Positions 8,151 through 49,194 of a stretch of DNA of 64,000 nt are shown piece after piece (the stretch's first letter is position 1; the number at the start of each line of letters is the position of its first letter). The notes under the pieces are model-generated. The model ran no database searches, was not told where the DNA came from, and worked only from the letters and a program-made list of their open reading frames with translations. The translations under genes and the position numbers were made by a program. Origin of the DNA: Styela clava (lineage: Eukaryota); NCBI RefSeq assembly GCF_964204865.1, contig NC_135258.1, positions 6,386,001-6,450,000 on the forward strand, read 5' to 3'.

Positions 8151-9792
8151 ATAATGGAACCGTTATTTGTAGCTTATTGTTAGGTAGGTATTTTTGAGGT
8201 AGGGCGCGAGACAAATTCTAAAAAAGGGGGCGCAGTTTAAAAAGTTTGAGAATCATTGCAATAAATAATATTGGCTGTAATGAGCGCATATACATAATAT
8301 AGAAAATACTGTATAAATAACTAGAACAACGTCTCCGCCCAGGGGAGGGTTATTCGCTGTAGTATTAAGCTACCAACAATTTTAAGATTTTTACTGTCAC
8401 TATAAACACACAATAAACTACTATAACTGCACAAAAGCGGAGGTGTGTCTTACGCATCCCACTAGCAATGAATTCTTTATTAAAAATTGAACAAATAAAG
8501 TAGTGTAATTCATAGGGACGGAGGAATTGGAAGTTTCAAAATCGAAAATGGGAGGAATTCAACAAAAAGGTTGGGAAATGCTGAACTAGAACAAACTTGT
8601 ACATTCTAGTATAACCTAGTTATAATATCCATCATGTCAGAAATGGTTGTATAAATGCAAAACATAGAATATCTTATAAAATTAGCTAAAAACAATGATT
8701 CTCTCTCGTATAGTTGAAAGGAAACCAAAATGTCGGCAATTGTTCTCATATGGGAATGTATTCGTCCGTCTTTAAAAACTATTGAAATAAATACGCGGGT
8801 GCAAATATAAAAATTATTGAAGATTTAATAAATAAATCGAAATACTGAATGAGTTTTTTGATATAATAAACTATAATTATTTGAAAGGACTCCAAGCAGG
8901 ATATTGTGCCATTTGATAAGACATTTCCTGAATTGGCGGCCATTGTGGTCAATAGAAATCGATTCATTAAATCATACATGCATCATTATTAAAGTATTGT
9001 AATACTACAGATTTATTTACTATTTTCCACTATTGAATTCTTTGTTAATGAGCAGGATACTGAATATGCAGGTAGAAGATGTAAAGCCATGCTTTGGAGG
9101 CAGGACAACACAACACGCCGAAGAGCAACGACCTGTTTTAAAGAAACAAGGTATTTATTTATATTCATTCATCTGGCCAAAAGCTATGATTATTGGGATT
9201 AAAACCCAAGTTATATAATTTGTTGCGAATTTCGGGTCGGGCTCGGGCTTCAGATCTTAGCTCTAACTGTAGCCATTATTTTGCTGGATTCTTTTACTTC
9301 GCAATGTTTTACTGAGTTTTAAGTAACATGATTACGGATATAGGTTTATGATATATGATTTTTTGTTATCTTGTTCCGCACATTTATCAGAGCGCTTTCT
9401 ATTCGATATAATCTACCTTTGTAATATAGTTGGCCTGGGACACAAATCAAAAATATTACGACATTAACATTGCTAGCTCCTACAGCAAATATTTAGTCCC
9501 GCACCAACATTTTACCAAAGAAAGTTCGTTATATCGTACAAATATCAACGTGTCTCATTTTGCATTGATGGATTCCTGATCATTAAGCCTTAAGAGTTAT
9601 TATTATTCTCTTTATCATTAAGATTGATGACCGCCTGACCGTAACACTCCCTCATGTCTATACCAAACTAATTTATTATTTTTTATTATTACGATGACTG
9701 TTATTTTATTTCGGTTGATGAAGAAAAATAAAATCTCTGGCTCTCACTCTCTATTTATATACGTTTCAGAATAAACAAAATCTTCAAAGAAA

Positions 9793-12609
9793 ATGCGTAT
9801 GAAAGTTGCAGCTATTCTCTGTTTCGCATTTTTTTTCCTGCTGGTGGAGGAGACTCATGGTTGGGGGATCAGAAGACTTTTTGTAACACCAGGAAGGATA
9901 TTTAAGCAGTCTGCGAACTCCTACAAATACGTTAGAAATCGGTAAGTTTATTCTCACCGCTTCAATATACTCAATTTATCAAAACTGAACAGTTTTTTTG
10001 AACTTTGCGACTAATTTTTGATATTACAGTTTAATTTTTAAATTGTGTTAATCTTGTATAAAGTTTCTAGGATAAGATAGGTAGGTAACGTGTTGCATAC
10101 TCCGCCGTGGTACCACAAATGCCAACGCAGAAGACAAATACACAACACAAAAGTGTAAATACACTGGTATTTACTTTTCTATGTAGCAAGCGACGTTCAA
10201 ATTATATTCAAGCTCAAGTTATTTTCATTAATAATTTAAATGGAAAATTAGATGGATGAGTACTACAGTCTGATTTTCAGCATGCACAAGCGGGCCCTAT
10301 GAAATACTTTGATGGGCCGGATCAAGACCTCGGGCCATAATTTTTCCATCCGATTTAAGCGATCAAAAGAACAAAATTACTTGAATGTTTTGTCTCCTTT
10401 AAACCATAGGGGGGGGGGGGTAACATACGGCCCGCGACGAGATTTTGACCGACCCGCTGACTGTACATCAGTACATTATGTTATTACATTATTACACTTT
10501 TAGTACATTATGATAAATTCATTATGTGTTGTTTGGTCTCCATTTTTTGTAAAATTTAAACTTTACTTTAAACACGATTCATAATTTTCTTTCTTGCATT
10601 AGCTAACAAATATGTGATTAAGATAATGAATACTATTCATGTTATAATCCGGCCCACCGAGAACTTCATTTTCCCACAACCGCCCGCCTACTAGAGAAGT
10701 TGCCCACCCCTTCTTTAAACCGATGAACCCTTCATATAGTTTTTATTTCTTTGAATACTTACGACACTTTACTTTTATAGCCCAGGCAAGTATTATCGCA
10801 GAGGTTTATGGGACAACAAAGTAGAAATCAGTAAGCTGAGAGAGCTCAAAGAGAAGGTAATCTACTATAATTTGATTAAGATAAAGCTAGCGTTTTAAGA
10901 CTTTGGCATCGCAGGTTATACATCGCTGGTTCAAATCCCATGCCCATCACCGTAACCAGAGTGAAATAAATTGGGTATTCATTGCCGAAGCAGAAAGATC
11001 GCCATATTTTGAAGAAAGTTCTCAGATATCATTGACTACTTGTATAGAGCCTAGTTTGTAGCGAAATCCGAGAAAAAGTGTCCTTAAAAATCATAACAAA
11101 AATTCAAGTTTTCTTTTCTGAGGCGCGGTGGCGTTGCGACGTGTGCTAAGCGTTAGAATTACGCTCGCCACCGTACCTCTTATTACCATACGTCGTCGTA
11201 AGGTGGGTCGCGTAACCGGCGGTTGGTTGCGGCTTTCCTCCATCATTAAGTCCATGCTGAAAACAAATAGCTGGCTAACTAATCTCAACTAATCTGGTAC
11301 GCCAAACATTTAAGCCTTCTGATTGACTTTTCTCTCACGCTGGATATATAAATGCGTAAACCCTATTCTATTTGCATCGCCATTGTCGTATAAATTCTTC
11401 GCTTTACCACGAATGCCTGTGACGAAATATTATTGAAACAATCCTTCATGACTTGAACTTTTCGATATTAACTGATAAAGCAGAGTGTCGCCTAGTTAGT
11501 AGTCAATATTTAAATACTTAACTAGTGATTCGTCTCAGATACAAGTACTTGATAGCTGGGGAAGTCCTAACTCTTGCAGAAATCATCCCATGACGGCAAG
11601 TAGTACAGCAATCCTGTTGCACATATAATTATTAACGTTAAAAATTCGCGTAGAATAATCAAATGGCGATAGAAACCGCGTCCCCACCGTCCAGCACAAC
11701 ACGAGAATTGTGGAACCTGGTTCGTCTGTAGCTTTCAAATTTCAGCACAACATTATTTTTGTTCAGGACGAAGAAGCCTATAAGAACGCAATGTTTAAGA
11801 TTGCTAATGAAACTGCGGAAAAATCGGGAGATGGTAAAGCTCAGATTATGACGGAAATGTTGGATGAACTTGTCAGCATGCCAGACGGTAAGTTTGTATT
11901 CGATATAATTGTTATGAATGAGAAGAATTGATGTGTAAGATGTTAAAATGTCTGAAAATAGACCAGAACTCTCTGATTCGGTATTTAGTCAAGTCACTAT
12001 ATTTTACACGTTGTAAGTTCAAAGGTTTGATCATACTCCTATTTCTATCTGGACGCTTAATTAACCTAGAATGTTGCAACTTGCAAATATCACTGAATCG
12101 CGTGAAGAAACTTTAAATTATTTGAATAGCATTTGCAGGTTAGCCATTTTTTTTAAAGTTTGAAATATGGCGCCATTTTCTCATTATGAAGTCATTTCCC
12201 CACATTTTTCAAGATTAAATCAAAAGATGATATATATTACTAATACATCGTAGTGTTACTAACCTTCAATCGTCTGATCCCCAAGATCATTTTACATGGG
12301 TCACTTTCAAATGTTTTTTTTTTATCAACTATCAGGTCCTAGACATTCAGTCACGACTTTTTACAAGCGTATGCTAGGGTCTATCTGGCTATATAACTTT
12401 AACAAGATTCTGTCAAAAATATCCGATTCAATTTCTCTCTGTTATAACATACAGTATGAACGCCTTTTTTCTCTATTTTAGAGGAATTCAACCAATTCAT
12501 GACTGAACAAGAACTTGAACAAATTGCAGACTCTGACGAGCTGCTGTTAAGAATCAGTGAAAAGGAGTTTCCTGACGGACAGACCGACGAACCGACACCC
12601 AGTTATTAA
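9793..12609 (+). CDS. Styelin-like antimicrobial peptide precursor, copy 1 (157 aa, 4 coding exons)
   Basis: Exons 9793-9941, 10781-10856, 11767-11887, 12482-12609; all GT-AG, phases 2/0/1, 474 nt. Protein: MRMKVAAILCFAFFFLLVEETHG-WGIRRLFVTPGRIFKQSANSYKYVRNRPGKYYRRGLW-DNKVEISKLRELKEKDEEAYKNAMFKIANETAEKSGDGKAQIMTEMLDELVSMPDEEFNQFMTEQELEQIADSDELLLRISEKEFPDGQTDEPTPSY*. AATAAA at 12654. Confidence 0.88.
10405..10712. mobile_element. hAT (Buster-type) MITE in intron 1 of copy 1
   Basis: 8-bp TSD CTTTAAAC at 10397-10404 and 10713-10720. Degenerate G-rich TIRs and GGCCC subterminal motifs. Confidence 0.75.
11122..11372 (+). mobile_element. tRNA-derived SINE family A (internally deleted copy)
   Basis: Homologous to 34583-34895, 45263-45575, the split copy at 52510/57430, and 59278-59629 (minus). 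Confidence 0.7.
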
Positions 12610-22846: not shown

Positions 22847-25553
22847 ATGCGCCTGAAAGCAACTATTCTCTTTTTTGCACTCTCTCTCCTATTGGTGGAG
22901 AAATCTCACGGTTGGGGGAGCAGAGGACTCCTTGGAACACCAGGAAGGGTTAATAGGGAGGCTGTGAACCTCTACAGAAAAATTAGGAAACATCCGTAAG
23001 TTTATTCTGACTGCTTATATATTCAATTTATAGAACTGAACAGTTTTTTACTTTGCGACTAATTTTTGAATATTACAGTTAAATTCTTAAATTTCATTTT
23101 GTGTAAAGTTATTACAATAAGATAGGTAACGTGTTTTAAACTCCGCCGTGGTATAAAATATGGCAACCCAGAAGACAAACACACAACTCCACGGTCTCGA
23201 CTGATAGCGTGTCCGATTAATTAAAGACTAAGATAAAATTTTGATGCTGAAATTTAAAAGATCAATATAAAAAAAAAAGTTTGCCTGAACGTTTGATTTT
23301 TGTTGTAAGCGTGGTCAAAAAAAAAAACACCTCCCACAGTGCGACAATTCGAATATCAATTTTCTCCGATGATTAGTTTTGTAACGAGTCAAATTTAATC
23401 TTTTCTTTAAATACTTACGACACTTTCATTTTATAGTTTGGGCAACTATGTAATTGAAAAGGGCAAAAAATATTTCTAACGTTTCTGGGACAACAAAGAA
23501 AAAATCAGTGAGCTGGGAGAGCTCAGAGAGAAGGTAATCCACTATAATTTGTTTAAAATAAAGCTAGTGGTTGTTAAAGTGTTGAGACTCAACTATATTG
23601 GCATCGCAGATTACACATCTCGGGTCCAAATCCCATGGCCCCCACTTTTACGGAAGGTGTAATAAATTAGGTATTCTATGCCTAACCAAAAAGATTGCCA
23701 TCCTTTCAAAAAAGTCCACAGATATCATTGACGACATCGACTAATAACAGGGCAAGATTCCGTGGTTCGCTAAATGATTAAGCCGTCTTATCGGCTTTCT
23801 TCTTACCCTGGACGAATAAATTCGTAAATCCCATCTTGTTTGCATCGCCATTGTTGTATAATTACTTTGCTTTACCATGAACAGTCGTGACGAAATAATA
23901 GAATATTGAAAAAATTCTACATGGCTCGAACTTTTTCGCTATCAACTGATAAAGCAGAGTGTTGAACAGCAACCTCCTGCCTATCGCCTAGTTTCAAGTC
24001 AATATTTGAATAGTTAACTAGGTATTCGTATTAGATACGTGCATTTGATGGTTAAGAAAATCGTAACTGTTACGCGAATCACTCCACGACGGCAAGAGGT
24101 ACGGCAATCCTGTCACACATAATTATGCCCGCGGAGTTTTCACGTTCAAACTAGCATAGGGTAATCAAAGGGCGATAGCAGGCGTGTTCCTACCGATGAG
24201 CACAACACGACAACTGTTGATCCTGCTTCGTTCTGTAGCAAATACCTTTCTCTTTGTTCAGGACGAAAAAGCCTACAAAAACGCAATGACCATGATCGCT
24301 GATGAAATTGCGGCAGAATCTGGAGATGGTGAAGCTCAGATTATGGTGGAAATGTTGAACGAACTTGCCAGCATGCCTGACGGTAAGTTTTCTAAACGAA
24401 ATGTTTGTTCTGAATAGGAAAGGAACTGACATGTAAAGTGCCACAGCGTTCGGAAATAAGCAAAATTTTTTCTCTGATTTTCTTTGTTAAAAATCAACAT
24501 TTATATTGAATGAGAGCTATGAATTAAAATGATCCAAACAAAGATTGTCATATGATAAAAATAAAATTCTAGCTATAGAAAACAGAAATTGAATGAAAAA
24601 TAAAAATATTACTAATAGAACGTATAAAATAGCGAATAGGGTGAACAAGCGTCGTATTATTGACCTGTAACTAACTATAATAGCGTTGTTTTTATTGATA
24701 ATTATTATTCTCGGATATCAGTGACTGTTTTTGCAGAGACTTGTACAGAGTAAATGACCCTCTGGAAAATTGTAAACATGGCATGTGTTCAGTACATACT
24801 TCGTTGGACCAGATAGTCTGATAGAAAAATTTTCTGATTTAACAGCGCGTGACAAGATCTTAAGATCTCAAGGATATCCAGTTCAATTTGTGGCTCTCTC
24901 CTATATCATAAAGCAGGAGTCGGCAACCTTTTGTCTCTCGCGGGCTAAAATTAAGGGTTGCAAGTCATTGGCGGGCCGCACATATTTTTAGAAAGTTGAA
25001 GACCGAACGGATGATACTTTTTATAATAAAAATCAAGCAGTGATACATCTCTCGAATAGAATATAGATTTATTTTCGCATTGCATCTCAAAAAATCCCAT
25101 TTGAATATTTTCGGCGCCATGAACCCTTTGCGCTTAGCATCAACTTTTCTGCGTTTTGTTGCCATTTGCTTAATTGTAATTAAATTATAGGCATATTAAA
25201 CGAGTAATTGTGAATTTTATATCTGTTAGAATATAATATAATTTAGACTACACGTGTATCACAATAAATTCTGTTACGTAAAGAATGTAATCTTCAAAAC
25301 AGTTGATTTGTTACTATAATTCAGTGAAGCGTCGCAGGCCGGATTATATTACCCCGCAGGCAATATCCGGCCCGCAGGCCGTAGGTTGCGATCCCTGACA
25401 TAAACGTCTTTTTTTTCTATTTCAGAGGAATTCAACCAATTCATGACTGAGCAAGAACTTGAACAAATTGCAGACTCTGACGAGCAGCTGTTAAGGATCA
25501 GTGAAAAGGAGTTTCCTGACGGACAGACCGACGAACCGACACCCAGTTTTTAA
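22847..25553 (+). pseudogene. Styelin-like precursor copy 2 with an in-frame TAA in exon 2 (63-aa product or pseudogene)
   Basis: Exons 22847-22995, 23437-23533, 24262-24382, 25426-25553 with intact splice sites. Reads MRLKATILFFALSLLLVEKSHG-WGSRGLLGTPGRVNREAVNLYRKIRKHPLGNYVIEKGKKYF*(23477-23479)RFWDNKEKISELGELREK...; the downstream frame is otherwise open. Confidence 0.82.
24914..25397. mobile_element. hAT MITE in the last intron of copy 2
   Basis: Termini CAGGAGTCGGCAACC and GGTTGCGATCCCTG; imperfect TSD TCATAAAG/ACATAAAC. Absent at this site in copies 1, 3 and 4. Related truncated copies at ~32000-32287 and ~42675-42965. Confidence 0.75.
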
Positions 25554-32657: not shown

Positions 32658-32782
32658 ATTATTTTTTATTATTACGATGACTGTTATTTTATTTTGGTTG
32701 ACGAAAAAAATAAAAATCTCTCTCTCTATGTGTTAATTTCCTTACATTATACGTTTCAGAAAACACAAAATCTTCAAAGAAA

Positions 32783-35700
32783 ATGCGTCTGAAAATTGCA
32801 GCTACCCTCTTTGTCGCGCTCTCTCTCCTACTGGTGGAGGAGTCTCATGGTTGGGGGGTCAGAAGACTCGTTCGACGAGTAGGAAGTATAGCTAGGAAGG
32901 CTGTGAAAGTCTATAAAAACGTTAGAAGGCATCCGTAAGTTTATCCTCACTGCTCCTATAAATATTTAGTTAATTACACTGAACATTTTATTACCTTTGC
33001 GAGCGCTCGCTCCAGAAGTGTGTGTTCCAATAAGGAGGTAACTAATTTTGTTCGCCTATTTTACATCAAATTGTGTAAAGAGGTTTGAAACCTAATGGTT
33101 TATTAATTTGGCTAACACAGACAGTCCCCGAACTCGTAACCGAACTGAAATAAGAAAAATTGGAATGAAATCATGGCCTAACGCTAACCTGGTACACACA
33201 ATACGGGAGTACCCCTTTGTGTATAATTTATAATATTATAAAATCTTGAATGTTTTAATTTTTTACAAAGTTTTTAGAATAAGATAGATAGTAACGTGTT
33301 TTATACTCCGCCGTGGTACAAAAAAATAGTAACACAGAGGATAAACACACAACTACAAGGAACAAATACTCCACTGATAGTGTGTTTATTCAAGACTATT
33401 CTTAAGATAAAAATAGAATTTGATGCCGACATTTTAAAGTCCAAGGGTGGGCATTTACTTTCCTAAGTCAGGGGTGTGCTGCGGCCCGCGGGCCAAATGC
33501 AGCCCGGAAGGAAAAATTGTGCGGCCCACGGAATAGTGCCAATTTTGAATGATGTGCCCACGAAACAAGTTATTAGTTTAGATAATTTGGTACGTGCGCA
33601 CAATTCCAATCTATTCGCATCGCAAAGCCTATACCAGTACCGGAGTGGCACCAGGTACTAACTCACCATTTCTGCAAAGCCCCCTAACAATGCCGTAAGA
33701 TCAATAACAAAAAGAAACAATTTTTGGTGCCTGCAACTACTAGAACGGCTATATTAAAAAAAAGCGCGGCCAGCGGTTTCACCCAGTTATTTGTATCCGG
33801 CCCTCCTGTAATAAAAGTTGCACACCTTTATTCTGAGTGGCAATGGACGTCCAAGTTATTTTCAAGCCAAAGTTATTTTCAACAGAAATTTATACGAATA
33901 AAAACTACAGTCTAAATTTGTAGCAAGCACAAGTGGGCCGGATGAAACACTTTGATGGGCTGGATCCGGCCCGCGGGCCTAATTTGTCCACCCGATTCAA
34001 ACGATAAAAGGAACAAATTTACTTGGACGTTTAGTTTTTGTTGGGTTTGTGGTAAAAATAAAAAACACCTTCCCCTCAGTGCGACGATATAAAATTCGAA
34101 TATCAAATTTTTTCAGACACTTGGTTTTAGGGATGCAAGGAGTCAAATTGAAAAAATAATGAAACCGACGAACCCTGTATATATTCTTCATTTATTTTAA
34201 AGCTTGGGCCACATTGCCATAGAAGCGGCCAAAAATTATGTTAAAAGTCGTTGGGACAACAAAGAAGAAATCAGTAGGCTGAGAGAGCTCAGAGAGAAGG
34301 TAATCTACTATATTAATCTGTTTTAGACAAAGCCAGCGGTTATTAAAGTGTCAAGACTTAACAGTTTCGGCATGGCCGGTTACACATCTCGTGTTCGAAT
34401 CCCATGCCCCTCACCTTAACCAGAATGTAATGAATTGGGTATTCAAGGCTGAACCAGAAAAATTGCCATTCTTTTAAAAAAGTCGTCAGATATCATTGAC
34501 TACTCGTAAAGAATCTCGTTTAAAGCAAAAGCACCAAATAAGCGTATGCGGATCATAGCAAAAATTCAAGTTTTCTATTTTGAGGCGCGACGGTGTGGCG
34601 CATCGTGCTAAGCGTTAGGAATACGCTCGCCATCGCACCTCTGATTATCATGCGTGAATGTGCGAAAGGATTCCTAAACTCTTTGCCGTCGTAAGGTGGT
34701 TCACCTAACCGCTGGTCGGTTACGGCTTCTTCCACCATCAAGTCCATACATCTAAAAACAAATAACTGGCTAACTAATTCCATACCCAATATTGACTGGT
34801 AACCGGTCGAGATGCCGTGGTTCGCCATATGATTAAGCCAACATTTCGGCATTTCTCTCACCCTGGACAACTAAATACGTAAATCTCATCCTATTTACAT
34901 CACCATTGTCGTATAAATACTTCGCTTCACCATGAATGCCCGTGACGAAATAATATTGGAACAATCCTACATGGCGAGAAATCTGTCGCTATTAACTGAT
35001 AATCTGAGTGTTGAATAACAATCTCCTGCCTATCGCCTAGTTACGAGTCAATATTTGAACAGTTAACTGGTTATTCGTCCTTAATATGTGTAGGCTACTT
35101 GATGGTTAAGAAAGTCGTAGCTGCTGCGTGAATCACCCCACGACAGCAATTCTGTCGCACAAATTATGCCCGCGGAATTTCAACCTTCTGACTTACGTAG
35201 AGCAATCAAATGTGGCGATAGCAAGCGTGTTCCTATCGCCAAGCACAACACCCCAACCTTTGACCCTGGTTCGTTCTGTGGCTTCCAAATTTCAGCACAA
35301 CTTTCTATTTGTTCAGGACGAAGAAGCCTATAAGAACGCAATGTCCATGATCGCTGATGAAATTGCGGCAGAATCTGGAGATGGTGAAGCTCAGATTATG
35401 GTGGAAATGTTGGACGAACTTGCCAGCATGCCTGACGGTAAGTCGCAGCCTTTAAAACTACCCTTTTTATCTTTTTATTTCATAATAAAAACGACAGATC
35501 TTAACAACGTCACAATGTTTCACTCAATAGTGTTGTTTTATTGCTAATTCACATCCCTGAATATTAGTGGTGCTTGCCTGTACAGGGCTTGTCCGGAGCG
35601 AAGGGCATTAATGAACGTCATTTTATAAAAAAAAAAATGAGAAACATGGCATTTGTTCAGTACATACTCCCGGTGGACTAGATAGTCTGATGCAGTGGTT

Positions 35701-36210
35701 CTCAAATTTTTTAGGCCCCGCCCCTTTTATAGAGTTTGTCAAGTCACGCGCACTACCTCAAAAATACCCAGATAACGATAATCTACAAATAACAGATAGT
35801 AAGGCGAAAGTATGTTTAGTTCAAAATCACGTTAAAAAAACATGAATGGAAAGAAAATAATAAAATAAACAAAAAGTTTTGAAATGTAAATATCCGAATT
35901 AGGTGGGGCAAGATAAAATCTGATAAGAATTTTTATTTTTAATTAGCTTCACGCCCTCTCAAAAAACTGCGCCGGCCGTTTGATAACCACTAATCTGATG
36001 GGAATATTTTCTGATTAACTGCACGTGACAAGATTTCGTGATTCTCTCCTATAACATACAGTATAAACGTCTTTTTCTTCTATTTCAGAGGAATTCAACC
36101 GATTCATGACTGAGCAAGAACTCGAACAAATTGCAGACTCTGATGAGCTGCTGTTATCATTTCAGTCAATTCCTGACGGACAGACCGACGAACCGACACC
36201 CAGTTATTAA
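32783..36210 (+). CDS. Styelin-like antimicrobial peptide precursor, copy 3 (163 aa)
   Basis: Exons 32783-32934, 34203-34299, 35317-35437, 36089-36210 (492 nt). Protein: MRLKIAATLFVALSLLLVEESHG-WGVRRLVRRVGSIARKAVKVYKNVRRHPLGHIAIEAAKNYVKSRW-DNKEEISRLRELREKDEEAYKNAMSMIADEIAAESGDGEAQIMVEMLDELASMPDEEFNRFMTEQELEQIADSDELLLSFQSIPDGQTDEPTPSY*. Confidence 0.9.
33469..33830. mobile_element. hAT MITE in intron 1 of copy 3 (duplicate at ~44145-44510)
   Basis: CAGGGGTGTGC(AAACT) ... AGTTGCACACCTTTA; imperfect TSD TCCTAAGT/TTCTGAGT. Confidence 0.7.
34583..34895 (+). mobile_element. SINE family A copy (duplicate at 45263-45575)
   Basis: Same sequence family as 59278-59629. Confidence 0.7.
35693..35992. 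mobile_element. hAT MITE, 300 bp, last intron of copy 3 (duplicate at 46506-46807)
   Basis: CAGTGGTTCTCAAA and TTTGATAACCACTA; TSD GTCTGATG/ATCTGATG. Empty site in copy 2 at ~24811-24840. Confidence 0.82.
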
Positions 36211-39045: not shown

Positions 39046-42000
39046 TCTGCTTTTCGTCGTAACTTCGTTTGTAGAAATACCTCAATAATATCACATTCAA
39101 AGCATATAACTTACAGCTTACAGGAAATTGAATCGGTCCGGAGTAGAACGTTACTAGAAATTCGTAGAATTATAGTATTTTGAGCGCAACCTTGTAGCAA
39201 TTACTATTTGAAATTATTGATATTGGGCTATTTTCTGATGGCTTCGTTGTGAATATCAAATTAACAATACTAAACAACTGTATAAATCATTGGTAATTTG
39301 TGTCCTAAAACCTAGCAATGCAATATACAGCCACGTGTGTGTGTGTAGTACAGCGTTTCCCAACATTTTTTGGTCGCGGACTATTTTCTTAACGGTGAAA
39401 CCCTTTGCGGACTCAAGGTGCGTTTATTGCAACCGTATACTCTGTGTGAACAGGCAATAAAACCGAACACAACAGAATTTTAACGAATTTCAACAATGGC
39501 CTTTTCTGTCGCACAATATTCAATCCATGACAACGACGAGAATTTAAGATGTATTCCTATTTTAACTTAATTGTGTTCATGATAATTCGCGGTTGCGTCG
39601 AATTACGACAAGATGAAAGTATTACTTCTCCCAAAATACAATGGCAATCTGTGAACATAATAATGTGAGAATATATTGTCCGATTATACTTAGTTTTGAT
39701 ACATATTTTTGCGATCTTGCTAATTTGTTATCGCCGTTAGAAAAATCCTACTATCTGCTATAAATTTTTAGAAAGTTCAACTTGATTTAGACTTATTAAA
39801 ATATATTTAAAGTATATATATTAGTAAATCAAAAATACATATTCATCGCCATGGTTTATTATTAATTTTATTGTGATCATTTTAATCTGAGGTTGTGTTG
39901 ACGAAATAAAAGCAATACTACTCAGAAAATATGATGACAATCCGTGGACACAAAGATGCGTGGTAAAGTGCCCGATTATATATTTTTTTGATTCGTATTT
40001 TTGTGAATTCGTCAAATCTGAGCTGTTCGTACAACACCTACGGCAATAATCGGAAAGTAATCGGGAATAATTCTGTAACCTACATCCTGCCTATAGCGTG
40101 TAACTAGTTCGACAGAATAAAACAATGGAAAGATATATAGAAAGAGTCTCTACGATTCAAATCAAATACCACAATATATATTTTATATTAGACAGTAGAT
40201 CAATTCATGAGAGGATCTTTTCTCCTGTTTTTTTTTTCCAAAATATATTAGTAGCGCAAAATGAAATGATTAATGCTGAAGTTTCCTTAGAACAAACAAT
40301 TTCTCTCTGGAGTAATTGAAGGCGCTCCAGAAGTAAATGTACCAATTACCAAAATGTAATTAATTTTTTTCGCCTACTTTTGTTGGTAAAGGGACGGAAG
40401 CATATGGGCAGGGGTATATTCACTTGCTATCACAAGAAGTACCCGAACTCGTAATAGAACTAAAATAAGAAAAATCGAAATAAAATTATGGCCGAACCCT
40501 AACCTACCGGAGTACTGATTAAAAGGAAACCAATTGTTCTTTTATGATAATACATTCATTCGTCATTATTTACTATTGAAATTGATGTAAAATAAAATAG
40601 GTTCCACGTATATCCAATTTATGGACTAATTATCTCTGCCAAGCAAACAGGAACCGCAGAATCGTGACAAATTTATAATTCTTCAGTATCCTACATCCTA
40701 TCAAGCGTGAAATAATTTCGACAGGTTTAAAAGTTTACAAATGGTAGATAGAAGAAGTCTTTGAAATTCAAATCAAATAACACCTTATCTATATTATATT
40801 AGACAGCAGATCAATTGATGGAAGGACCTTTATTCTTTTTTTTCGAATATAAATTACTGGTACAAAATAAAATGATTGAATCAGAAATTCCGGAAAACAA
40901 AACAACGCGCTGTGGTATAAGGAAACCGAGATGTCGCCAATTGTTATCACATGAGAATGCATTCATTCTCCTCCATATTCACTATTAAAACAGTTACAAA
41001 GTTACAGATAACCATTATTATGTGTTACCCAATTTAACAAAATATATTTAATTAAAAGTATACTCTGAGGCACAATTGTGAAAGGAATTAAAGTTAATTG
41101 GAATAAAAACAAGATGTCGGCAATTGTGTCCATGAGAATGCATTGAAATGACTCGAAGCACCTAATTGGGTACTCCCTTAGTATGTGTACCAGTTTAGGG
41201 TTAGGTCATATTATTATTCCGATTTTCTTATTTTAGTTCTAATACGAGTTCGCCCATAGGTTTCATTCCCTTAACACAACTTGATGTAAAATAGGTGAAC
41301 AAAATTAGTTGCCTCCATATTGGTATACATACTTCTGGAGCGCCCTAAATTGTGCTATTTGAAAAAGCAACGTGAATTGCCATCATTGTGCTGTTTTAAA
41401 AATGAGTTGTTTTGTTACAGTTTGAAATTCGATTTGAAATAATTTAGCGCAGAAACCTTTAGGTTCTTCAGATATTAAATTGCACTGTTTCACAATGACG
41501 TATTATCAGCAATTTGTGGGTGATATAGATATTATAATGGTTAACTGAAAGAACTCAAAGCAGGCAATCGTGCCATTAGAGAAAAAAGCATCGTGTGAAT
41601 AGGTACAATTGTGTTGTTTTAAAAAATGAGTTATTTGTATTCACAGATCCGGATTCGATTGGAAATAATTGAGTGCGGAAACGTTCAGGATTCAGGTATT
41701 CAATTGCATCGTTTTACAATAGCGTACTAGCTGTCAATCATGGTGAACATATTGCACATATAATACATAAAACAATATATAACACGTTATATATGGATTA
41801 TTGCGACTAATTCAATCTCTGAATAATTTGAATTGAGGAATGAATGAAATGAAAGTGAAATTGAAGATTCGAAAGTCGGAAATTGTGTTCAGATGACAAT
41901 ACATTTAATAAATAATGTTGAGCGCACATACATATTATAAAACCTCTTCGATATATAACTAGAATAACGTCTCCTCCCCCATTTTTGGTCGACTACCAAA

Positions 42001-42382
42001 TTGTACGAGTATCGAGCCGTTCGACTACCGAGTTATCATTGTATAATTGGAAGAAAACCAAGATGTCGGCAATTGTTCTTATGTGAGAATGCATTCATGC
42101 GCCTTTTTTCACTATTGAAATAGATACACAGATGCAAATATAAAAATTAATACTAATAAGATTTTTGATGAATTAAACTAAAATTATTTGAAAGGACTAT
42201 AAGCAGGCTATTGTGCCCTTTGATAAGACATCGCCTGAATTGGCGGGCATTGTGGTCAATAGAAACCCATTCATTAAATCATACATGCATCATTATTGTA
42301 GCATTTTAATATAGATTTATTAACTATTGTCATTATTAATTTTGTCGTAAATGCGCAGGATACTGATCATACAGGTAGAAGA

Positions 42383-42463
42383 TATAAAGCCACTCTTTGT
42401 AGGGCAGGACAACACAACAAGCCGAAGAGCAAAGGCAAACTGTTTGAAAGAAACGAGGTATTT
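42383..42463 (+). promoter_or_regulatory. Putative TATA box and non-coding first exon of copy 4
   Basis: TATAAA at 42383-42388 and donor GAG|GTATTT at 42458. Confidence 0.5.
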
Positions 42464-43459
42464 ATTTTCATTTATTTGGTCAATAGCTATGATCATCGGG
42501 ATTCGAAACTAGGTCATATAATCTGCGGCTTAACTGAGATTAAATAAGCGAGGTTGCTTCAAATTAAATTCATTCAATTCTCTATGTTTCACTGACTTTT
42601 GGCAAATAGGTCTTGTCCGTCGGTATTCGAACTCAAGTCAAATAATCTGCGGTAAAATTGAGATTAACTATTTTGTCACTCGCGGGCCAAAATTAAGGGT
42701 TGCAAGTCTTGACGGGCCGAACATATTTTTTGAAAGTTGAAAACCGAACGGCTGAAGAAACTTCTTCATAAACACCAAGAAATGATACATCTCTCAAATA
42801 GAATATAAATTTATTTCCTCATTGAATTTCATCTCAGATAATTCCATTTGACTATTTTCTGCGTGATTGAACACTTTGCACTTGTCATCAACGGGTTTCG
42901 CGGGCCGGATTATTTTACTTCGCGGGCCGGATCTGACCCGCGGGGCGTGGGTTGCCGACCCCTGCTATAAGGAATTATGTTAAATACTCGATCTTTCGAA
43001 CTCTCTATTTTGTTGATTTTTAGTATCATGATTAAGGATGGATATTACACTCAAGTCGCTTTAACTCATCTAAAGAATTTTGTCCAAACATGTGCGAATC
43101 AATATTCTACTGTTTTTTTATCGTTTATTTTTCCTTTCTTATTCTTCTGGCATTAACTGTGACCATTTATGAGCGCCTGATCGTATCAGTCCCTCCTGTC
43201 TATACAAAACTAATTTATTATTTTGGACCTCCTGAAGTATGCGCACCAAGATGGCCCACAACCTGAACTGAGGTTGTGTACCAGGTTAGGGTTCAGGTTA
43301 TGCGACATCTTGGTGGACATACCTCAGGAGTACCATTATTTTTTATTATTACGATGACTGTTATTTTATTTTGGTTGACGGAAAAAATAAAAATCTCTCT
43401 CTCTATGTGTTAATTTCCTTACATTATACGTTTCAGAAAAAACAAAATCTTCAAAGAAA

Positions 43460-46400
43460 ATGCGTCTGAAAATTGCAGCTACCCTCTTTGTCGCGCTCTC
43501 TCTCCTACTGGTGGAGGAGTCTCATGGTTGGGGGGTCAGAAGACTCGTTCGACGAGTAGGAAGTATAGCTAGGAAGGCTGTGAAAGTCTATAAAAACGTT
43601 AGAAGGCATCCGTAAGTTTATTCTCACTGCTCCTATAAATATTTAGTTAATTACACTGAACATTTTATTACCTTTGCGAGCGCTCGCTCCAGAAGTGTGT
43701 GTTCCAATAAGGAGGTAACTAATTTTGTTCGCCTATTTTACATCAAATTGTGTAAAGAGGTTTGAAACCTAATGGTTTATTAATTTGGCTAACACAGACA
43801 GTCCCCGAACTCGTAACAGAACTGAAATAAGAAAAATTGCAATGAAATTATGGCCTAACGCTAACCTGGTACACACAATACGGGAGTACCCCTTTGTGTA
43901 TAATTTATAATATTATAAAATCTTGAATGTTTTAATTTTTTACAAAGTTTTTAGAATAAGATAGATAGTAACGTGTTTTATACTCCGCCGTGGTACAAAA
44001 AATAGTAACACAGAGGATAAACACACAACTACAAGGAACAAATACTCCACTGATAGTGTGTTTATTCAAGACTATTTTTAAGATAAAAATAGAATTTGAT
44101 GCCGACATTTTAAAGTCCAAGGGTGGGCATTTACTTTCCTAAGTCAGGGGTGTGCAAACTGCGGCCCGCGGGCCAAATGCAGCCCGGAAGGAAAAATTCT
44201 GCGGCCCACAGAATAGTGCCAATTTTGAATGATGTGCCCACGAAACAAGTTATTAGTTTAGATAATTTGGTACGTGCGCACAATTCCAATCTATTCGCAT
44301 CGCAAAGCCTATACCAGTACCTGAGTGGCACCAGGTACTAACTCACCATTTCTGCAAAGCCCCCTAACAATGCCGTAAGATCAATAACAAAAAGAAACAA
44401 TTTTTGGTGCCTGCAACTACTAGAACGGCTATATTAAAAAAAAGCGCGGCCAGCGGTTTCACCTAGTTATTTGTATCCGGCCCTCCTGTAATAAAAGTTG
44501 CACACCTTTATTCTGAGTGGCAATGGACGTCCAAGTTATTTTCAAGCCAAAGTTATTTTCAACAGAAATTTATACGAATAAAAACTACAGTCTAAATTTG
44601 TAGCAAGCACAAGTGGGCCGGATGAAACACTTTGATGGGCTGGATCCGGCCCGCGGGCCTAATTTGTCCACCCGATTTAAACGATAAAAAGAACAAATTT
44701 GATTGGACGTTTAGTTTTTGTTGGGTTTGTGGTAAAAATAAAAAACACCTTCCCCTCAGTGCGACGATATAAAATTCGAATATCAAATTTTTTCAGACAC
44801 TTGGTTTTAGGGGTGCAAGGAGTCAAATTGAAAAAATAATGAAACCGACGAACCCTGTATATATTCTTCATTTATTTTAAAGCTTGGGCCACATTGCCAT
44901 AGAAGCGGCCAAAAATTATGTTAGAAGACGTTGGGACAACAAAGAAGAAATCAGTAGGCTGAGAGAGCTCAGAGAGAAGGTAATCTACTATATTAATCTG
45001 TTTTAGACAAAGCCAGCGGTTATTAAAGTGTCAAGACTTAACAGTTTCGGCATGGCCGGTTACACATCTCGTGTTCAAATCCCATGCCCCTCACCTTAAC
45101 CAGAATGTAATGAATTGGGTATTCAAGGCTGAACCAGAAAAATTGCCATTCTTTTAAAAAAGTCGTCAGATATCATTGACTACTCGTAAAGAATCTCGTT
45201 TAAAGCAAAAGCACTAAATAAGCGTATGCGGATCATAGCAAAAATTCAAGTTTTCTATTTTGAGGCGCGACGGTGTGGCGCATCGTGCTAAGCGTTAGGA
45301 ATACGCTCGCCATCGCACCTCTGATTATCATGCGTGAATGTGCGAAAGGATTCCTAAACTCTTTGCCGTCGTAAGGTGGTTCACCTAACCGCTGGTCGGT
45401 TACGGCTTCTTCCACCATCAAGTCCATACATCTAAAAACAAATAACTGGCTAACTAATTCCATACCCAATATTGACTGGTAACCGATCGAGATGCCGTGG
45501 TTCGCCATATGATTAAGCCAACATTTCGGCATTTCTCTCACCCTGGACAACTAAATACGTGAATCTCATCCTATTTACATCACCATTGTCGTATAAATAC
45601 TTCGCTTCACCATGAATGCCCGTGACGAAATAATATTGGAACAATCCTACATGGCGAGAAATCTGTCGCTATTAACTGATAATCTGAGTGTTGAATAACA
45701 ATCTCCTGCCTATCGCCTAGTTACGAGTCAATATTTCAACAGTTAACTGGTTATTCGTCCTCAATATGTGTAGGCTACTTGATGGTTAAGAAAGTCGTAG
45801 CTGCTGCGTGAATCACCCTACGACAGCAATTCGGTCGCACAAATTATGCCCGCGGAATTTCAACCTTCTATTTCACGTAGAGCAATCAAATGTGGCAATA
45901 GCAAGCGTGTTCCTATCGCCAAGCACAACACCCCAACCTTTGACCTTTAGTTGCAGTCTTTTAATATCTGTTAAATCTTCTTGTGGTTGCACAATCTTGC
46001 ATTATTTCGACAACATCTTGCCTTTTCCAGCGAGATCTTCAAATAGTTGTTCTAGCCAATGCCTCCTGCACTTTTGTGAGCGTGTCAACTCCATAGATGA
46101 ATTATAGGCTTTGACCTTTGACCTTTGACCTTTGACTTCCAAATTTCAGCACAACTTTCTTATTGTTCAGGACGAAGAAGCCTATAAAAACGCAATGTCC
46201 ATGATCGCTAATGAAATTGCGGCAGAATCTGGAGATGGTGAAGCTCAGATCATGATGGAAATGTTGGACGAACTTGCCAGCATGCCTGACGGTAAGTCGC
46301 GTGTTATGTGTTTTATAAAATAAACGATGGATCTTAACAACGTCACACTGTTTTACTCGAATAGTGTTGTTTTATTGCTAATTCACATCCCTGAATATCA

Positions 46401-47025
46401 GTGGTGCTTGCCTGTATAGGGCTTGATGAACGTCATTTTATAAAAAAAAATGAGAAACATGGCATTTGTTCAGTACATACTCCCGGTGGACTAGATAGTC
46501 TGACGCAGTGGTTCTCCAATTGTTTAGGCCCCGCCCCTTTTATAGAGTTTGTCAAGTCACGCGCACTACCTCAAAAATACCCAGCTAACGATAATCTACA
46601 AGTAACAGATAGTAAGGCGAAAGTATGTTTAGTTCAAAATCACGTTAAAAAAAAACATGAATGGAAAGAAAATAATAAAATAAACAAAAAGTTTTGAAAT
46701 GTAAATATCCGAATTAGGTGGGGCAAGATAAAATCTGATAAGTATTTTTATTTTTAATTAGCTTCACGCCCTCTCAAAAAACTGCGCCGGCCGTTTGATA
46801 ACCACTAATCTGATGGGAATATTTTCTGATTAACTGCACGTGACAAGATTTCGTGATTCTCTCCTATAACATACAGTATAAACGTCTTTTTCTTCTATTT
46901 CAGAGGAATTCAACCAATTCATGACTGAGCAAGAACTCGAACAAATTGCAGACTCTGATGAGCTGCTGTTATCAGTTCAGTCAATTCCTGACGGACAGAC
47001 CGACGAACCGACACCCAGTTATTAA
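43460..47025 (+). CDS. Styelin-like antimicrobial peptide precursor, copy 4 (163 aa)
   Basis: Exons 43460-43611, 44883-44979, 46171-46291, 46904-47025. Exon 1 is identical to copy 3. The cationic domain ends ...KNYVRRRW. 6 replacement and 2 silent differences from copy 3. Confidence 0.9.
45946..46136 (-). mobile_element. ~190 bp insertion specific to copy 4, probably a 5'-truncated RTE-like LINE 3' end
   Basis: Absent from copy 3 (35260-35285). Flanked by (TTTGACC)n. The minus strand reads ..QKCRRHWLEQLFEDL.., resembling an RTE ORF2 C-terminus. Confidence 0.5.
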
Positions 47026-49194
47026 TTTTATGCTTCAGTTTTTTCATTGTTTCATACAGATATCGCAGATTTGAAAAAAAAATAAAAATAAAAGTGGCGC
47101 CATCGTAAATTGTAACTGTATTTCATCTGTTCCTGCTAGAGTATTAATTGAGATACATTTAACACAAGGGTGTGCAACCTGCGCCCGGGGGCCAAATGCG
47201 GATCAGAAGTGGAAAATGTGCAGCCGCGAAGAAATGCTAATTTTGAATGGTGTGCAGTGTGCATTGCGTGGCCCGCTAAACCAGTTTTTAATTTAGTTAA
47301 ATCTAGTAATTCCAATCCCTTTACGTTCAAAGCCCATGCCCGAGTTCAACGTAATATCTATGCTTATAACATGGGCCTTCAGTATTATAGATTGCACATT
47401 CCTACTTTAACAGAGCGTAAATTTACCAAACTCCTAACCAGTGTTACCTATAAGGAAATGTTTCACTGAGAAAATGTTTGTTTTACTGAGAAAGAATATT
47501 CTAAAGCTGAGCAGAGTTTTTCACGGTTTATAAACTATGTGAAATATTACAACAGTCTAATATATTGTCGAACAAAGTAGGCTACATATTTAACTTGAAA
47601 AAACGGATTGGGCATTCTAGCTAGGTGTTAGAAAATATAACGAGCCACGCTTCGAAAACGTAATGTTTCAAGTGAGCAAGAATGTGATTTTATTGCACAA
47701 ATGGTCTGGTGTTACCGCGCAGTGGCGAAAAGAAATATACGAGTCGAAATAAAACGATAAATAACTCAACTTCAAGTAAGATTGAAGATTCAGATGTCAG
47801 GCAGAATCTTGCGTCTGAAATCTGTGACTTGTGACACTTGTCGCAGTTAAAAGAAGAGTAGCGCACATAATGTAAACCTGGTCAACGTGACGACACGGTC
47901 AATCACCTGGAGACACAAAGTGAGACGTCGCTATACCCTTATAATTAATAGCAGATTTTGTATATATATATATATATATATAATTGAAATAATTATTCTT
48001 GAACAAAATGAGTTCAATAAATATCAAAAATCAACCGATTTTTTTTGATGAAGGAAATTTTTGGTTGTTCGTTTTATTGTTGGGTAAAAACTGGCCTACA
48101 GCGACAATAAATATTTAATTTAGTTAGAATTATCTCTTGTTTTCATTTTTTCGAATTTGTTTGTTGACCTATTATTTAAATTTTGAACAACTCAACTGCC
48201 GGTAATGTTGTATTTGAGATTACTCTTTAGACTGTCAAGTATTTTGATCGTGAAGAATAACAAAATTCCCGGCATGCAAAGTTGATTTCGCCCGATTGCA
48301 TTTTCAGGAAGCGCTCGTCCTGCACTTGGCACGTAATCCAGACAGACCGAGATGGACAACAAAGTTCCTTTTTATCAGGGGTTCTGAGGGTTTCTTCGTT
48401 ACCGGAATGTCGTTGGAAATTTTCTTTTTCTTGCAATTTCGTTCTTATTTGTTGATTCAGACCGGCTGTTCTCTCCCACTTGGGGAGATAGACAATTTTT
48501 AGGAGGCGTGAAGTTAAATAAATATAAGAGTATGTGTTAGATTTGATCTTGTCCGCATTATTTTAGATATTTACATTTTAAAACTTTTCATTTATTTCTT
48601 TATTTACGTTCTATCCAACGTGTTTTTCGAATAAAACATAGTTTCGCCTTACTATCTTCTTCTCTTCTGTTGTTCATTCACGTTTAATAATAAATAAAGC
48701 AAAGAATCCAAACATAAAGTGGTGATTGAAAGCCTGAGCTAAAATATCAAAATGCTTCGGATACACAAAAAATATGAAACGAACGTTGCAAATAAAACGA
48801 TTGAAAAAGGAAAAACTTTCAAATACTGATCATGACTTTATGGAATCTTTATGTTGTTATCCACCACAAGGAAAGGGCGTTGAGCATCATCGATGCTATT
48901 TGTTTTTCTATTTCATGCAATTGCTTCCTTAATTCGTCCTAAAACAAAATTGGATGTCAGTTATCTCAGCAATATACCAAACATACTTTACTCGGCGCAT
49001 AGTATGTGAACATAGATTGTGCACCAAAATGGCGCACAATCTGAACATAGTATTGTACCTGGTTAGGATTCAGGCTTTGCGCCATCGTGGTGCACATACT
49101 TCCGTAGCGCCCTTTTCTCGGCGCGTCTAATTCATTTTTATACCACGCTGATTCCACGCCTTTCGTCCCGAACATGACTGTGGACATGAAGCCA

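What the first reader, a model, noticed from the sequence alone, without database searches (positions are those of the whole stretch)
8700..47100. Hidden four-gene cluster of styelin-like antimicrobial peptide precursors
Seen: four paralogous genes with conserved GT-AG junctions (phases 2, 0, 1; exon 3 always 121 nt). Each encodes a 22-23 aa signal ending (S/T)HG, a Trp-initial cationic amphipathic region (hand-counted net about +10, +8, +12, +13), and a ~95-aa acidic tail (about -16 to -21). Recalled, not searched: Styela styelin precursors begin MQMKATIL...SEA-GW and have a propiece MTDEEFQEFM. Here the equivalents are MRLKATIL...SHG-WG and MPDEEFNQFM. The cationic sequences match no styelin or clavanin I recall. 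Inference: an undescribed or unannotated ascidian host-defence peptide subfamily. No exon appears as a meaningful ORF, so ORF-based annotation would miss it.
Basis: partly seen in the sequence, partly recalled or inferred. Interest (0 to 1): 0.92.

Follow-up and report, generated by a model that had tools for sequence, protein, structure and literature searches.

The report
Botryllin-like antimicrobial peptide gene cluster
Four tandem copies (three intact, one cut by a stop codon) of a sea-squirt (Styela clava) gene encode a secreted precursor with a strongly cationic peptide and an acidic tail; they are relatives of the tested antimicrobial peptide botryllin and distant kin of styelins, already sit in RefSeq as 'uncharacterized proteins', and have not been tested for function.

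Summary
The window is Styela clava chromosome piece C10:6386001-6450000. It holds four + strand, four-exon paralogues. All 12 introns are GT-AG with phases 2, 0, 1, and exon 3 is 121 nt in every copy. Copies 1, 3 and 4 encode 157-163 aa prepropeptides: a 23-aa signal, a Trp-initial cationic segment (+10, +12, +13) and an acidic tail (-16 to -21).

The genes are not hidden. RefSeq proteins XP_077972654.1 and XP_077972740.1 equal my models of copies 3 and 4 exactly. Copy 2 has only a partial 104-aa model. All are named 'uncharacterized protein'.

A profile of the family finds botryllin (Botryllus schlosseri, a tested antimicrobial peptide) at E = 1.5e-4 in 1.84 billion proteins. Kinship with canonical styelins is distant. 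The match to Pfam Styelin is below threshold, but profile-profile probability is 97.9% over the signal and the N-terminal cationic part. The true styelin genes lie 10 Mb away.

The cationic part evolves 4-5 times faster than the tail.

Verdict: new, untested members of the known styelin/botryllin kind, within a family of at least about 20 loci. Antimicrobial function is inferred. No RNA reads could be examined.

The parts
9793..9941 (+). copy 1 exon 1: 23-aa signal ending ETHG, plus the first 26 residues of the cationic part; ends in phase 2, donor GT
10781..10856 (+). copy 1 exon 2 (76 nt, 21 nt shorter than in the other copies): end of the cationic part (...RRGLW) and start of the acidic tail (DNKVEISKLRELKEK); phase 0
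11767..11887 (+). copy 1 exon 3, 121 nt, acidic propiece (DEEAYKNAM...SMPD); phase 1
12482..12609 (+). copy 1 exon 4: EEFNQFM... acidic tail and stop codon. Whole model is 157 aa. No protein of this copy was found in the databases searched.
22847..22995 (+). copy 2 exon 1: 22-aa signal (MRLKATIL...KSHG) plus cationic part; phase 2
23437..23533 (+). copy 2 exon 2, holding the in-frame stop
23477..23479 (+). in-frame TAA (codon 64) of copy 2, three codons before the cationic/acidic boundary. It leaves a 63-aa product without propiece, or marks a dying gene.
   Evidence: the RefSeq model P0002 avoids it by starting at 24196
24262..24382 (+). copy 2 exon 3, 121 nt
25426..25553 (+). copy 2 exon 4 and stop codon
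32783..32934 (+). copy 3 exon 1 (LOC120339777, XP_077972654.1): signal ending ESHG plus cationic helix 1; phase 2
34203..34299 (+). copy 3 exon 2: hinge (P-L-G-H), cationic helix 2, start of acidic tail; phase 0
35317..35437 (+). copy 3 exon 3, 121 nt, acidic propiece; phase 1
36089..36210 (+). copy 3 exon 4 and stop codon; 163-aa product identical to P0001
43460..43611 (+). copy 4 exon 1 (LOC144411699, XP_077972740.1)
44883..44979 (+). copy 4 exon 2; differs from copy 3 by KSR to RRR at the end of the cationic part
46171..46291 (+). copy 4 exon 3, 121 nt
46904..47025 (+). copy 4 exon 4 and stop codon; 163-aa product identical to P0012
29297..48168 (.). recent tandem duplication, about 10.7 kb per unit (29297-37329 against 40015-48168, 92-96% identical), that made copies 3 and 4
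   Evidence: introns of copies 3 and 4 differ by 1-4%

Best explanation
The region is a tandem cluster of Styela clava genes for secreted prepropeptides of the botryllin/styelin kind. Three are intact (copies 1, 3, 4) and one is interrupted by a nonsense codon (copy 2).

Shown: gene structure, product sequences, homology to botryllin, and region-specific evolutionary rates.

Inferred mechanism:
1. The 23-aa signal is removed after (S/T)-H-G. This leaves a pro-form whose N-terminal Trp-initial segment of 37-45 aa (+10 to +13) is offset by a 95-97-aa acidic helical propiece (-16 to -21).
2. The pro-form is net negative, so it can be stored harmlessly, by analogy with botryllin in granules of cytotoxic haemocytes.
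3. Proteolysis near the W/D boundary frees the cationic peptide.
4. In copies 3 and 4 that peptide is an amphipathic helix, a Pro-Leu-Gly hinge (the Pro codon spans the exon 1/exon 2 junction), and a second helix. It would permeabilise microbial membranes.
5. Duplication plus fast change confined to the cationic part diversifies the arsenal.
For: 1. Structure: four copies with identical GT-AG phase pattern 2-0-1. The copy 3 and 4 models equal RefSeq proteins exactly.
2. Homology to a tested antimicrobial peptide: an HMM of six family members, searched against 1.84 billion representatives, returns only S. clava paralogues and botryllin WCR67982.1, at E = 1.5e-4 over profile positions 1-136 of 149. 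The full-length alignment shares the signal, the W start, a cationic block and acidic helices. Synthetic botryllin kills bacteria and yeast, and the protein is stored in morula-cell granules (PMC9966394).
3. Styelin kinship: hhalign gives probability 97.9% over the signal plus the N-terminal cationic part. Pfam Styelin is the commonest weak hit (6 of 11 members, best E 0.0083), and it falls on the M-x-D-E-E-F-x-x-F-M propiece.
4. The same four-exon, phase 2-0-1 structure at homologous boundaries is found in distant paralogues on other chromosomes: P0008, P0010, P0005 and P0007. Styelin genes share the phase-2 intron inside the cationic peptide.
5. Rates: dN of the cationic part is 0.38-0.46, against 0.09-0.11 for the tail. 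dN/dS is about 0.8-1.2 against 0.3-0.7. Introns 1-2 differ by 0.24-0.55. Net charge nevertheless stays at +8 to +13.
6. Amphipathicity: the best 18-residue hydrophobic moment of copies 3 and 4 is 0.88, against 0.50-0.53 +/- 0.12 for shuffles; 0.3% of shuffles reach it. AlphaFold2 draws helices 24-49 and 51-67.
Against: - No expression evidence could be obtained.
- No activity, cell type or processing site is known for these proteins.
- No conserved dibasic or Gly-acidic cleavage motif marks the end of the cationic part in the window copies.
- Copies 1 and 2 have helix breakers (T-P-G) and only marginal amphipathicity (shuffle fractions 0.07 and 0.03).
- The AlphaFold2 model is of low confidence (mean pLDDT 54.6; 47-53 in the cationic part).
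- The Pfam Styelin match is far below the cut-off (11.5 against 27 bits).
- hhalign values from alignments this shallow (Neff 1.3-2.7), and partly over a signal peptide, are optimistic.
- dN/dS near 1 does not prove positive selection.
Confidence: 0.72

Rival explanations
1. The genes are expressed secreted granule proteins of the same family, but their main role is not killing microbes. Possible roles include cytotoxic or allorecognition effectors of morula-like cells, components of extracellular traps or clots, or signalling peptides.
For: Botryllin itself sits in extracellular traps and is linked to cytotoxic morula cells (PMC9966394). The conserved part of the family is the acidic propiece, not the cationic peptide, so the propiece may have a function of its own.
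Against: The cationic, amphipathic, fast-evolving, charge-preserving segment is the usual signature of membrane-active defence peptides. The only tested relative is microbicidal at 3-50 ug/mL.
Confidence: 0.15
2. They are canonical styelins, that is, new isoforms of the Pfam Styelin family.
For: The same signal-peptide type, a G/A-W start, a phase-2 intron inside the cationic peptide, and the M-x-D-E-E-F-x-x-F-M motif.
Against: The PF17562 score is 11.5-12 bits against a cut-off of 27. The precursors are 157-163 aa, not 80-81 aa, with about 55-60 extra acidic residues (exon 3 and part of exon 2). Later intron phases differ: 2-0-0 in styelin genes and 2-0-1 here, and the intron before the EEF motif is shifted by 7 nt. 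The HMM search did not reach styelins at E <= 0.001. The three canonical styelin genes lie at C10:16.31-16.34 Mb, 10 Mb away.
Confidence: 0.03
3. The cluster is largely decaying or silent DNA: duplicated gene copies kept by recent duplication rather than by function.
For: Copy 2 has a nonsense codon and a 16-nt loss before its ATG. There is a frameshifted exon-1 relic at C10:6252923-6253060. Transposons lie between the copies. No protein of copy 1 was found in the databases. No RNA data were seen.
Against: Copies 1, 3 and 4 keep open frames, all splice sites and signal peptides. Tail dN is 3-5 times lower than intron divergence. Copies 3 and 4 have RefSeq protein models that match exactly.
Confidence: 0.07

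Closest known systems
Botryllin (Botryllus schlosseri, WCR67982.1; Franchi, Ballarin and Cima 2023, PMC9966394)
   Same: Same animal family (Styelidae). A 158-aa prepropeptide against 157-163 aa here. A 23-aa signal followed by W, a cationic segment (net about +11) and then a long acidic helical propiece. It aligns over the full length and is found by the family HMM at E = 1.5e-4.
   Different: Only 26% identical to P0001. Botryllin and its closer S. clava kin (LOC120342944, on C3) carry a W-G-R-R-R-R-R stretch and a K-H-K motif that the window genes lack. The cationic sequences are unrelated in detail. Botryllin has activity, antibody and in situ data; the window genes have none.
Styelins C, D, E (Styela clava; Pfam PF17562; P0013-P0015)
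   Same: Same species and same chromosome. Similar signal peptide, a Trp at or next to the mature N-terminus, a phase-2 intron inside the cationic peptide, and the M-(T/P)-D-E-E-F-x-x-F-M motif in the propiece.
   Different: Styelin precursors are 80-81 aa, with a 32-aa mature peptide and a propiece of about 25 aa. The window genes have an extra acidic stretch of about 55-60 aa. They score below the Pfam cut-off, and intron phases are 2-0-0 against 2-0-1. Styelin D carries bromo-Trp, DOPA and hydroxylated Lys/Arg (Taylor et al. 2000, cited in PMC9966394). Nothing is known about modifications here.
Ciona Ci-MAM-A / Ci-PAP-A and other linear cationic helical peptides with an anionic C-terminal propiece (own knowledge; Ciona screen PMC7387483 listed, not read)
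   Same: Works alike: signal, cationic amphipathic helix and anionic extension, with haemocyte expression.
   Different: No sequence similarity was detected by any search here. These are analogues, not shown to be relatives.

Membership tests
Styelin (Pfam PF17562) | Score at or above the curated gathering cut-off (27 bits) | tested here: not met
   P0001 11.5 bits, P0006 12 bits. 6 of 11 superfamily members match weakly, best E 0.0083.
Styelin (Pfam PF17562) | Precursor of about 80 aa: signal, 32-aa mature peptide, short acidic propiece | tested here: not met
   157-163 aa, with a 95-97-aa tail, against 80-81 aa for P0013-P0015.
Styelin (Pfam PF17562) | Homologous signal peptide and N-terminal half of the cationic peptide | tested here: met
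   hhalign A2 against A3: probability 97.9%, 37 columns, 30% identity. With the narrower alignment A1: 78.6%.
Styelin (Pfam PF17562) | Same exon-intron plan | tested here: inconclusive
   Intron 1 is phase 2 inside the cationic peptide in both, offset by 2-5 codons depending on the alignment. Intron 2 is phase 0 in both but at different places. The intron next to the EEF motif is phase 0 in styelin genes and phase 1 here, 7 nt apart.
Botryllin-like prepropeptides (no curated model; defined by botryllin, PMC9966394) | Significant full-length sequence similarity to botryllin | tested here: met
   Family HMM against botryllin: E = 1.5e-4 and 38 bits in a library of 1.84 billion, covering profile positions 1-136.
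Botryllin-like prepropeptides (no curated model; defined by botryllin, PMC9966394) | About 160 aa: 23-aa signal, cationic peptide starting at or near Trp, long acidic C-terminal propiece | tested here: met
   botryllin figures.
Botryllin-like prepropeptides (no curated model; defined by botryllin, PMC9966394) | Four coding exons with phases 2-0-1 at homologous boundaries | tested here: met
   True of the window copies and of the S. clava paralogues P0005, P0007, P0008 and P0010. The botryllin gene plan itself is only a figure and could not be read.
Botryllin-like prepropeptides (no curated model; defined by botryllin, PMC9966394) | Microbicidal activity of the freed peptide; storage in cytotoxic haemocyte granules | not testable with these tools
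   Needs synthesis and MIC assays, in situ hybridisation or antibodies.
Linear cationic amphipathic alpha-helical antimicrobial peptides (functional class) | Net positive charge and amphipathic helix above chance | tested here: met
   This verdict holds for copies 3 and 4 only: +12 and +13, hydrophobic moment 0.88, reached by 0.3% of shuffles. Copies 1 and 2 are inconclusive: +10 and +8, shuffle fractions 0.07 and 0.03, with T-P-G breakers. The AlphaFold2 helices are of low confidence.

The most novel reading that the evidence does not exclude
The four genes are one arm of a large, unrecognised S. clava defence-peptide superfamily that joins styelins and botryllin.

- It has at least about 20 loci in seven places: C10 6.25-6.43 Mb, C19 2.03 Mb, C3 7.75-7.77, 16.14-16.22 and 22.99-23.06 Mb, C18 11.43-11.44 Mb and C6 17.3 Mb.
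- The members checked (window copies, P0005, P0007, P0008, P0010) share a 2-0-1 exon plan and a conserved acidic propiece, while the cationic 'warheads' are hypervariable.
- The family varies between individuals. The older RefSeq protein of LOC120339777 (P0004) has a cationic part that exists nowhere in this assembly.
- Several of the encoded peptides would be new, salt-tolerant antimicrobials. On this reading the short styelins would be a derived branch that lost the exon 3 region.
Probability: 0.45. Interest if true: 0.5.

Novelty: new member of a known kind. Interest (0 to 1): 0.4.

Why it matters
Styela clava gave the classical tunicate antimicrobial peptides (styelins, clavanins) by biochemical purification in the 1990s. 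This cluster shows that its genome holds further, unstudied relatives of a longer precursor type whose only characterised member is botryllin. If the peptides are active, they add new cationic sequences from a marine, high-salt setting. The conserved propiece and exon plan give a handle for finding the whole family in tunicate genomes. The differences between assemblies suggest that the locus varies between individuals, as immune gene clusters often do. It is not a new kind of system, and the genes are already in RefSeq, so the value is in annotation and peptide discovery rather than in a new concept.

Tried and rejected
I did not resend it or any part of it.
Exons were searched by reference. 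Full-length searches used the database proteins P0001 and P0012, which equal the copy 3 and copy 4 models.
- The joined models of copies 1 and 2 have no reference and were only translated inside scripts. Whether copy 1 has an exact database entry was therefore not looked up. It did not appear among relatives, but one search also failed to list P0009, so absence there is weak evidence.
- Complex prediction (acidic tail 69-163 against cationic part 24-68 of P0001) gave no verdict: score 0.02, mark 0.34. It is no evidence either way for the propiece-neutralisation step.
- PDB sequence search with the family profile: nothing below E = 0.05, and only unrelated proteins.
- ESM Atlas: the best hit is an amphibian bombinin antimicrobial-precursor cluster at 0.77, below the level where a hit means anything.
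- Rfam: no RNA family in the window.
- A 35-nt block invariant in all four copies, 75-123 nt upstream of the ATG, looked like a family promoter element. It is part of a dispersed repeat of about 70 nt, with at least 181 candidate copies on all chromosomes. I rejected it as a family-specific signal.
- Membership in Pfam Styelin was rejected (see membership test).
- The botryllin primers and epitopes in PMC9966394 were read but not searched. None of the three epitope peptides occurs in the window products as translated.
Full report
WHAT IS THERE.
The window is Styela clava, assembly piece C10:6386001-6450000. Six-frame motif scans and a self-BLAST show four + strand repeat units. I fixed the exon boundaries in two ways. 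For copies 3 and 4 I required GT-AG introns and an exact match to database proteins. For copies 1 and 2 I used the homologous sites.

The coordinates are:
- Copy 1: 9793-9941, 10781-10856, 11767-11887, 12482-12609 (157 aa).
- Copy 2: 22847-22995, 23437-23533, 24262-24382, 25426-25553.
- Copy 3: 32783-32934, 34203-34299, 35317-35437, 36089-36210 (163 aa).
- Copy 4: 43460-43611, 44883-44979, 46171-46291, 46904-47025 (163 aa).

All 12 introns are GT-AG. Copies 3 and 4 lie in a recent tandem duplication of about 10.7 kb (92-96% identity; introns 1-4% apart). Copies 1, 2 and 3 are older, with introns 1-2 differing by 0.24-0.55 substitutions per site.

THE PRODUCTS.
Copies 1, 3 and 4 encode three parts:
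- a 23-aa signal (n-region MR(L/M)K, a hydrophobic core, and E-(T/S)-H-G at the end);
- a Trp-initial cationic segment of 37-45 aa, with net charge +10, +12 and +13;
- an acidic tail of 95-97 aa, with net charge -16, -21 and -21.

Copy 2 is different. Exon 2 holds an in-frame TAA at 23477-23479 (codon 64), three codons before the cationic/acidic boundary. Copy 2 also lacks 16 nt directly upstream of its ATG. Read as it stands, it would give a 22-aa signal plus a 41-aa peptide (+8) with no propiece. Its downstream exons are still well kept, so the break is probably recent.

ALREADY ANNOTATED.
I searched exon 3 of copy 3 by reference, inside its stop-free 139-aa frame so that proteins of full length were eligible. 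This returned seven S. clava RefSeq/UniRef proteins, all named 'uncharacterized protein'.
- P0001 (XP_077972654.1, LOC120339777) maps on the window with exactly my copy 3 exons.
- P0012 (XP_077972740.1, LOC144411699) maps with exactly my copy 4 exons.
- P0002 (LOC144427128, 104 aa) maps to 24196-24382 + 25426-25553. It is a model of copy 2 that starts at an ATG inside intron 2, downstream of the nonsense codon.
- No protein of copy 1 turned up. That is weak evidence, because one search also missed a known member.

So the cluster is not hidden from a eukaryotic annotation pipeline. It is unnamed and, as far as the searchable literature goes, undescribed. No paper holds any of the five LOC identifiers, and none describes S. 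clava relatives of botryllin.

WHAT FAMILY.
I aligned six full-length paralogues (A1). The signal and the tail are conserved and the cationic part is hypervariable. As an HMM against 1.84 billion representative proteins, A1 found six proteins at E <= 0.001: five from S. clava, and botryllin of Botryllus schlosseri (P0011 = WCR67982.1, E = 1.5e-4, profile positions 1-136 of 149).

Botryllin is a 158-aa prepropeptide with a 23-aa signal. Its synthetic cationic peptide kills bacteria and yeast (MIC 3-50 ug/mL), and the protein sits in granules of cytotoxic morula cells and in extracellular traps (PMC9966394).

The 11-sequence alignment A2 runs from end to end. A word-indexed search with A2 again gave only S. 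clava proteins and botryllin.

RELATION TO STYELINS.
- Pfam has a Styelin model (PF17562). The window proteins hit it only weakly: 11.5 bits against a cut-off of 27, on residues 118-144, the M-P-D-E-E-F-N-x-F-M region. It is nevertheless the Pfam family that most members of A2 touch (6 of 11, best E 0.0083).
- Profile-profile comparison of A2 with the styelin precursors gives 97.9% probability over the signal and the first half of the cationic peptide. With A1 alone it gives 78.6%. These alignments are shallow and partly cover a signal peptide, so I read this as probable distant kinship, not membership.
- The three canonical styelin genes lie on the same chromosome piece but 10 Mb away, at C10:16.31-16.34 Mb.
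- Their introns have phases 2, 0, 0. The first is a phase-2 intron inside the cationic peptide, as here. The one beside the EEF motif is 7 nt away from ours and in another phase.
- Styelin precursors lack the equivalent of the end of exon 2 and of exon 3.

FAMILY SIZE AND EXON PLAN.
In the same genome the close subfamily has:
- two more genes just upstream of the window on the minus strand (C10:6372710-6374777 = P0007, exon lengths 149/97/121/80, phases 2-0-1; and C10:6364.9-6366 kb);
- one on C19 (P0005, phases 2-0-1);
- a frameshifted exon-1 relic at C10:6252923-6253060.

More distant members form arrays on C3 at 16.14-16.22 Mb (at least ten exon-1 matches to the botryllin-like P0010), on C3 at 22.99-23.06 Mb (P0008 group), on C3 at 7.75-7.77 Mb, on C18 at 11.43-11.44 Mb and on C6 at 17.3 Mb. 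P0008 (32% identical) and P0010 (25%) have introns of phases 2, 0, 1 at the boundaries homologous to ours. In P0010 the third intron has a GC donor. The shared exon plan supports common descent of the long-propiece genes.

HOW IT PROBABLY WORKS.
Rates. Between copies 1, 2 and 3/4:
- cationic part: dN 0.38-0.46, dN/dS 0.8-1.2;
- tail: dN 0.09-0.11, dN/dS 0.3-0.7;
- signal: dN 0.09-0.20.

The cationic dN is about as high as intron divergence, and the tail dN is 3-5 times lower. Net charge is kept throughout. This is the usual pattern of antimicrobial peptide genes: constraint on the signal and propiece, and free or diversifying change in the active peptide. The counts are too small to prove positive selection.

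Shape. The cationic part of copies 3 and 4 is strongly amphipathic. The best 18-residue moment is 0.88, against 0.50-0.53 +/- 0.12 in shuffles, and 0.3% of shuffles reach it. Copies 1 and 2 are marginal. AlphaFold2 with A2 gives an all-helical model with helices 24-49 and 51-67 split at Pro51, but at low confidence (mean pLDDT 54.6).

From this and from botryllin I infer the following steps:
1. Signal cleavage after H-G.
2. Storage as a net-negative pro-form in which the acidic tail offsets the cationic part.
3. Proteolytic release near the W/D boundary.
4. Membrane attack by a helix-hinge-helix peptide.

The cleavage site is not marked by a conserved dibasic or Gly-acidic motif in the window copies, so the C-terminus of the active peptide is unknown. 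A test of tail-to-peptide binding gave no verdict.

WHAT COULD NOT BE DONE.
The joined step was left out for copies 1 and 2, and was replaced by the identical database proteins for copies 3 and 4.
- SignalP is not available here. The signal is judged from its n/h/c layout and from alignment to styelin and botryllin signals.

VERDICT.
These are new, untested members of a known kind, and interest is moderate. The wider point is that S. clava holds a multi-cluster superfamily linking styelins and botryllin, with signs of variation between assemblies: P0004 has no exact locus here, and P0003 and P0007 of one LOC differ by indels in the cationic part. That is the most interesting lead.

Noticed in passing
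G000 C10:6372710-6374777 (-) and C10:6364881-6366000 (-); loci L005, L006, L008, L009, L022, L023: Two more members of the same subfamily lie 11-21 kb upstream of the window on the opposite strand (LOC120340133 = P0007, which maps exactly, and LOC120339839). They have a shorter tail ending ...LLLSDH or ...SNH.
   Followed up: partly
G000 C10:6252923-6253060 (-), locus L017: An isolated exon-1 relic 133 kb upstream. The signal is 85% identical, but the cationic part is split between two reading frames and has a stop before the donor site. It is probably a pseudogene.
   Followed up: partly
G000 C3:16142285-16218770 (+): An array of at least ten exon-1 matches to the botryllin-like protein LOC120342944 (P0010, W-G-R-R-R-R-R type). 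It is probably the true botryllin counterpart cluster of S. clava. The third intron of P0010 has a GC-AG boundary.
   Followed up: partly
G000 C10:16312499-16341809, loci L026-L034, L038: Three canonical styelin genes (D/E-like, C, and a further C-like one), each with four coding exons and intron phases 2, 0, 0.
   Followed up: partly
proteins P0004 and P0003 against this assembly: Older RefSeq/UniRef proteins of LOC120339777 and LOC120340133 have cationic parts that are not encoded anywhere in this assembly; the best exon-1 identity for P0004 is 67%. This suggests allelic or copy-number variation between the sequenced individuals.
   Followed up: partly
window 9677-9711, 22738-22772, 32660-32694, 43337-43371: A 35-nt block is identical in all four copies, 75-123 nt before the ATG. 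It is part of a dispersed repeat of about 70 nt with at least 181 candidate copies on all chromosomes (87-95% identity). Whether it has been taken over as a promoter element is unknown.
   Followed up: partly
window 9763-9769, 22833-22839, 32753-32759, 43430-43436: A conserved acceptor-like GTTTCAG lies 24 nt before the ATG (8 nt in copy 2, after a 16-nt loss). The P0010 gene has ttttcag directly before its ATG. This suggests a 5' UTR intron or spliced-leader trans-splicing; it was not tested.
   Followed up: no
window 1916-5291 (-): Two ORFs of a non-LTR retrotransposon: endonuclease/exonuclease/phosphatase (446 aa) and reverse transcriptase (553 aa).
   Followed up: partly
window 18289-20091 (+): A 600-aa ORF between copies 1 and 2, with a Spin-doc-type zinc finger and a hAT C-terminal dimerisation domain (a hAT transposase-like gene).
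   Followed up: partly
window 52945-56854 (-): ORFs of an LTR-type retroelement: integrase (H2C2 zinc finger and rve core) and reverse transcriptase, split over several frames. A 657-bp direct duplication (98.8% identical) lies beside it at 50287-51600.
   Followed up: partly
window 60419-61870 (+): A 483-aa ORF with multiple C2H2 zinc fingers.
   Followed up: partly
window 7589-8149; 58464-58910; 62753-62860: Tandem repeats: a 16/32-nt unit in about 35 (16-nt) or 18 (32-nt) copies, a 63-nt unit in about 7 copies, and a 19/57-nt unit.
   Followed up: no
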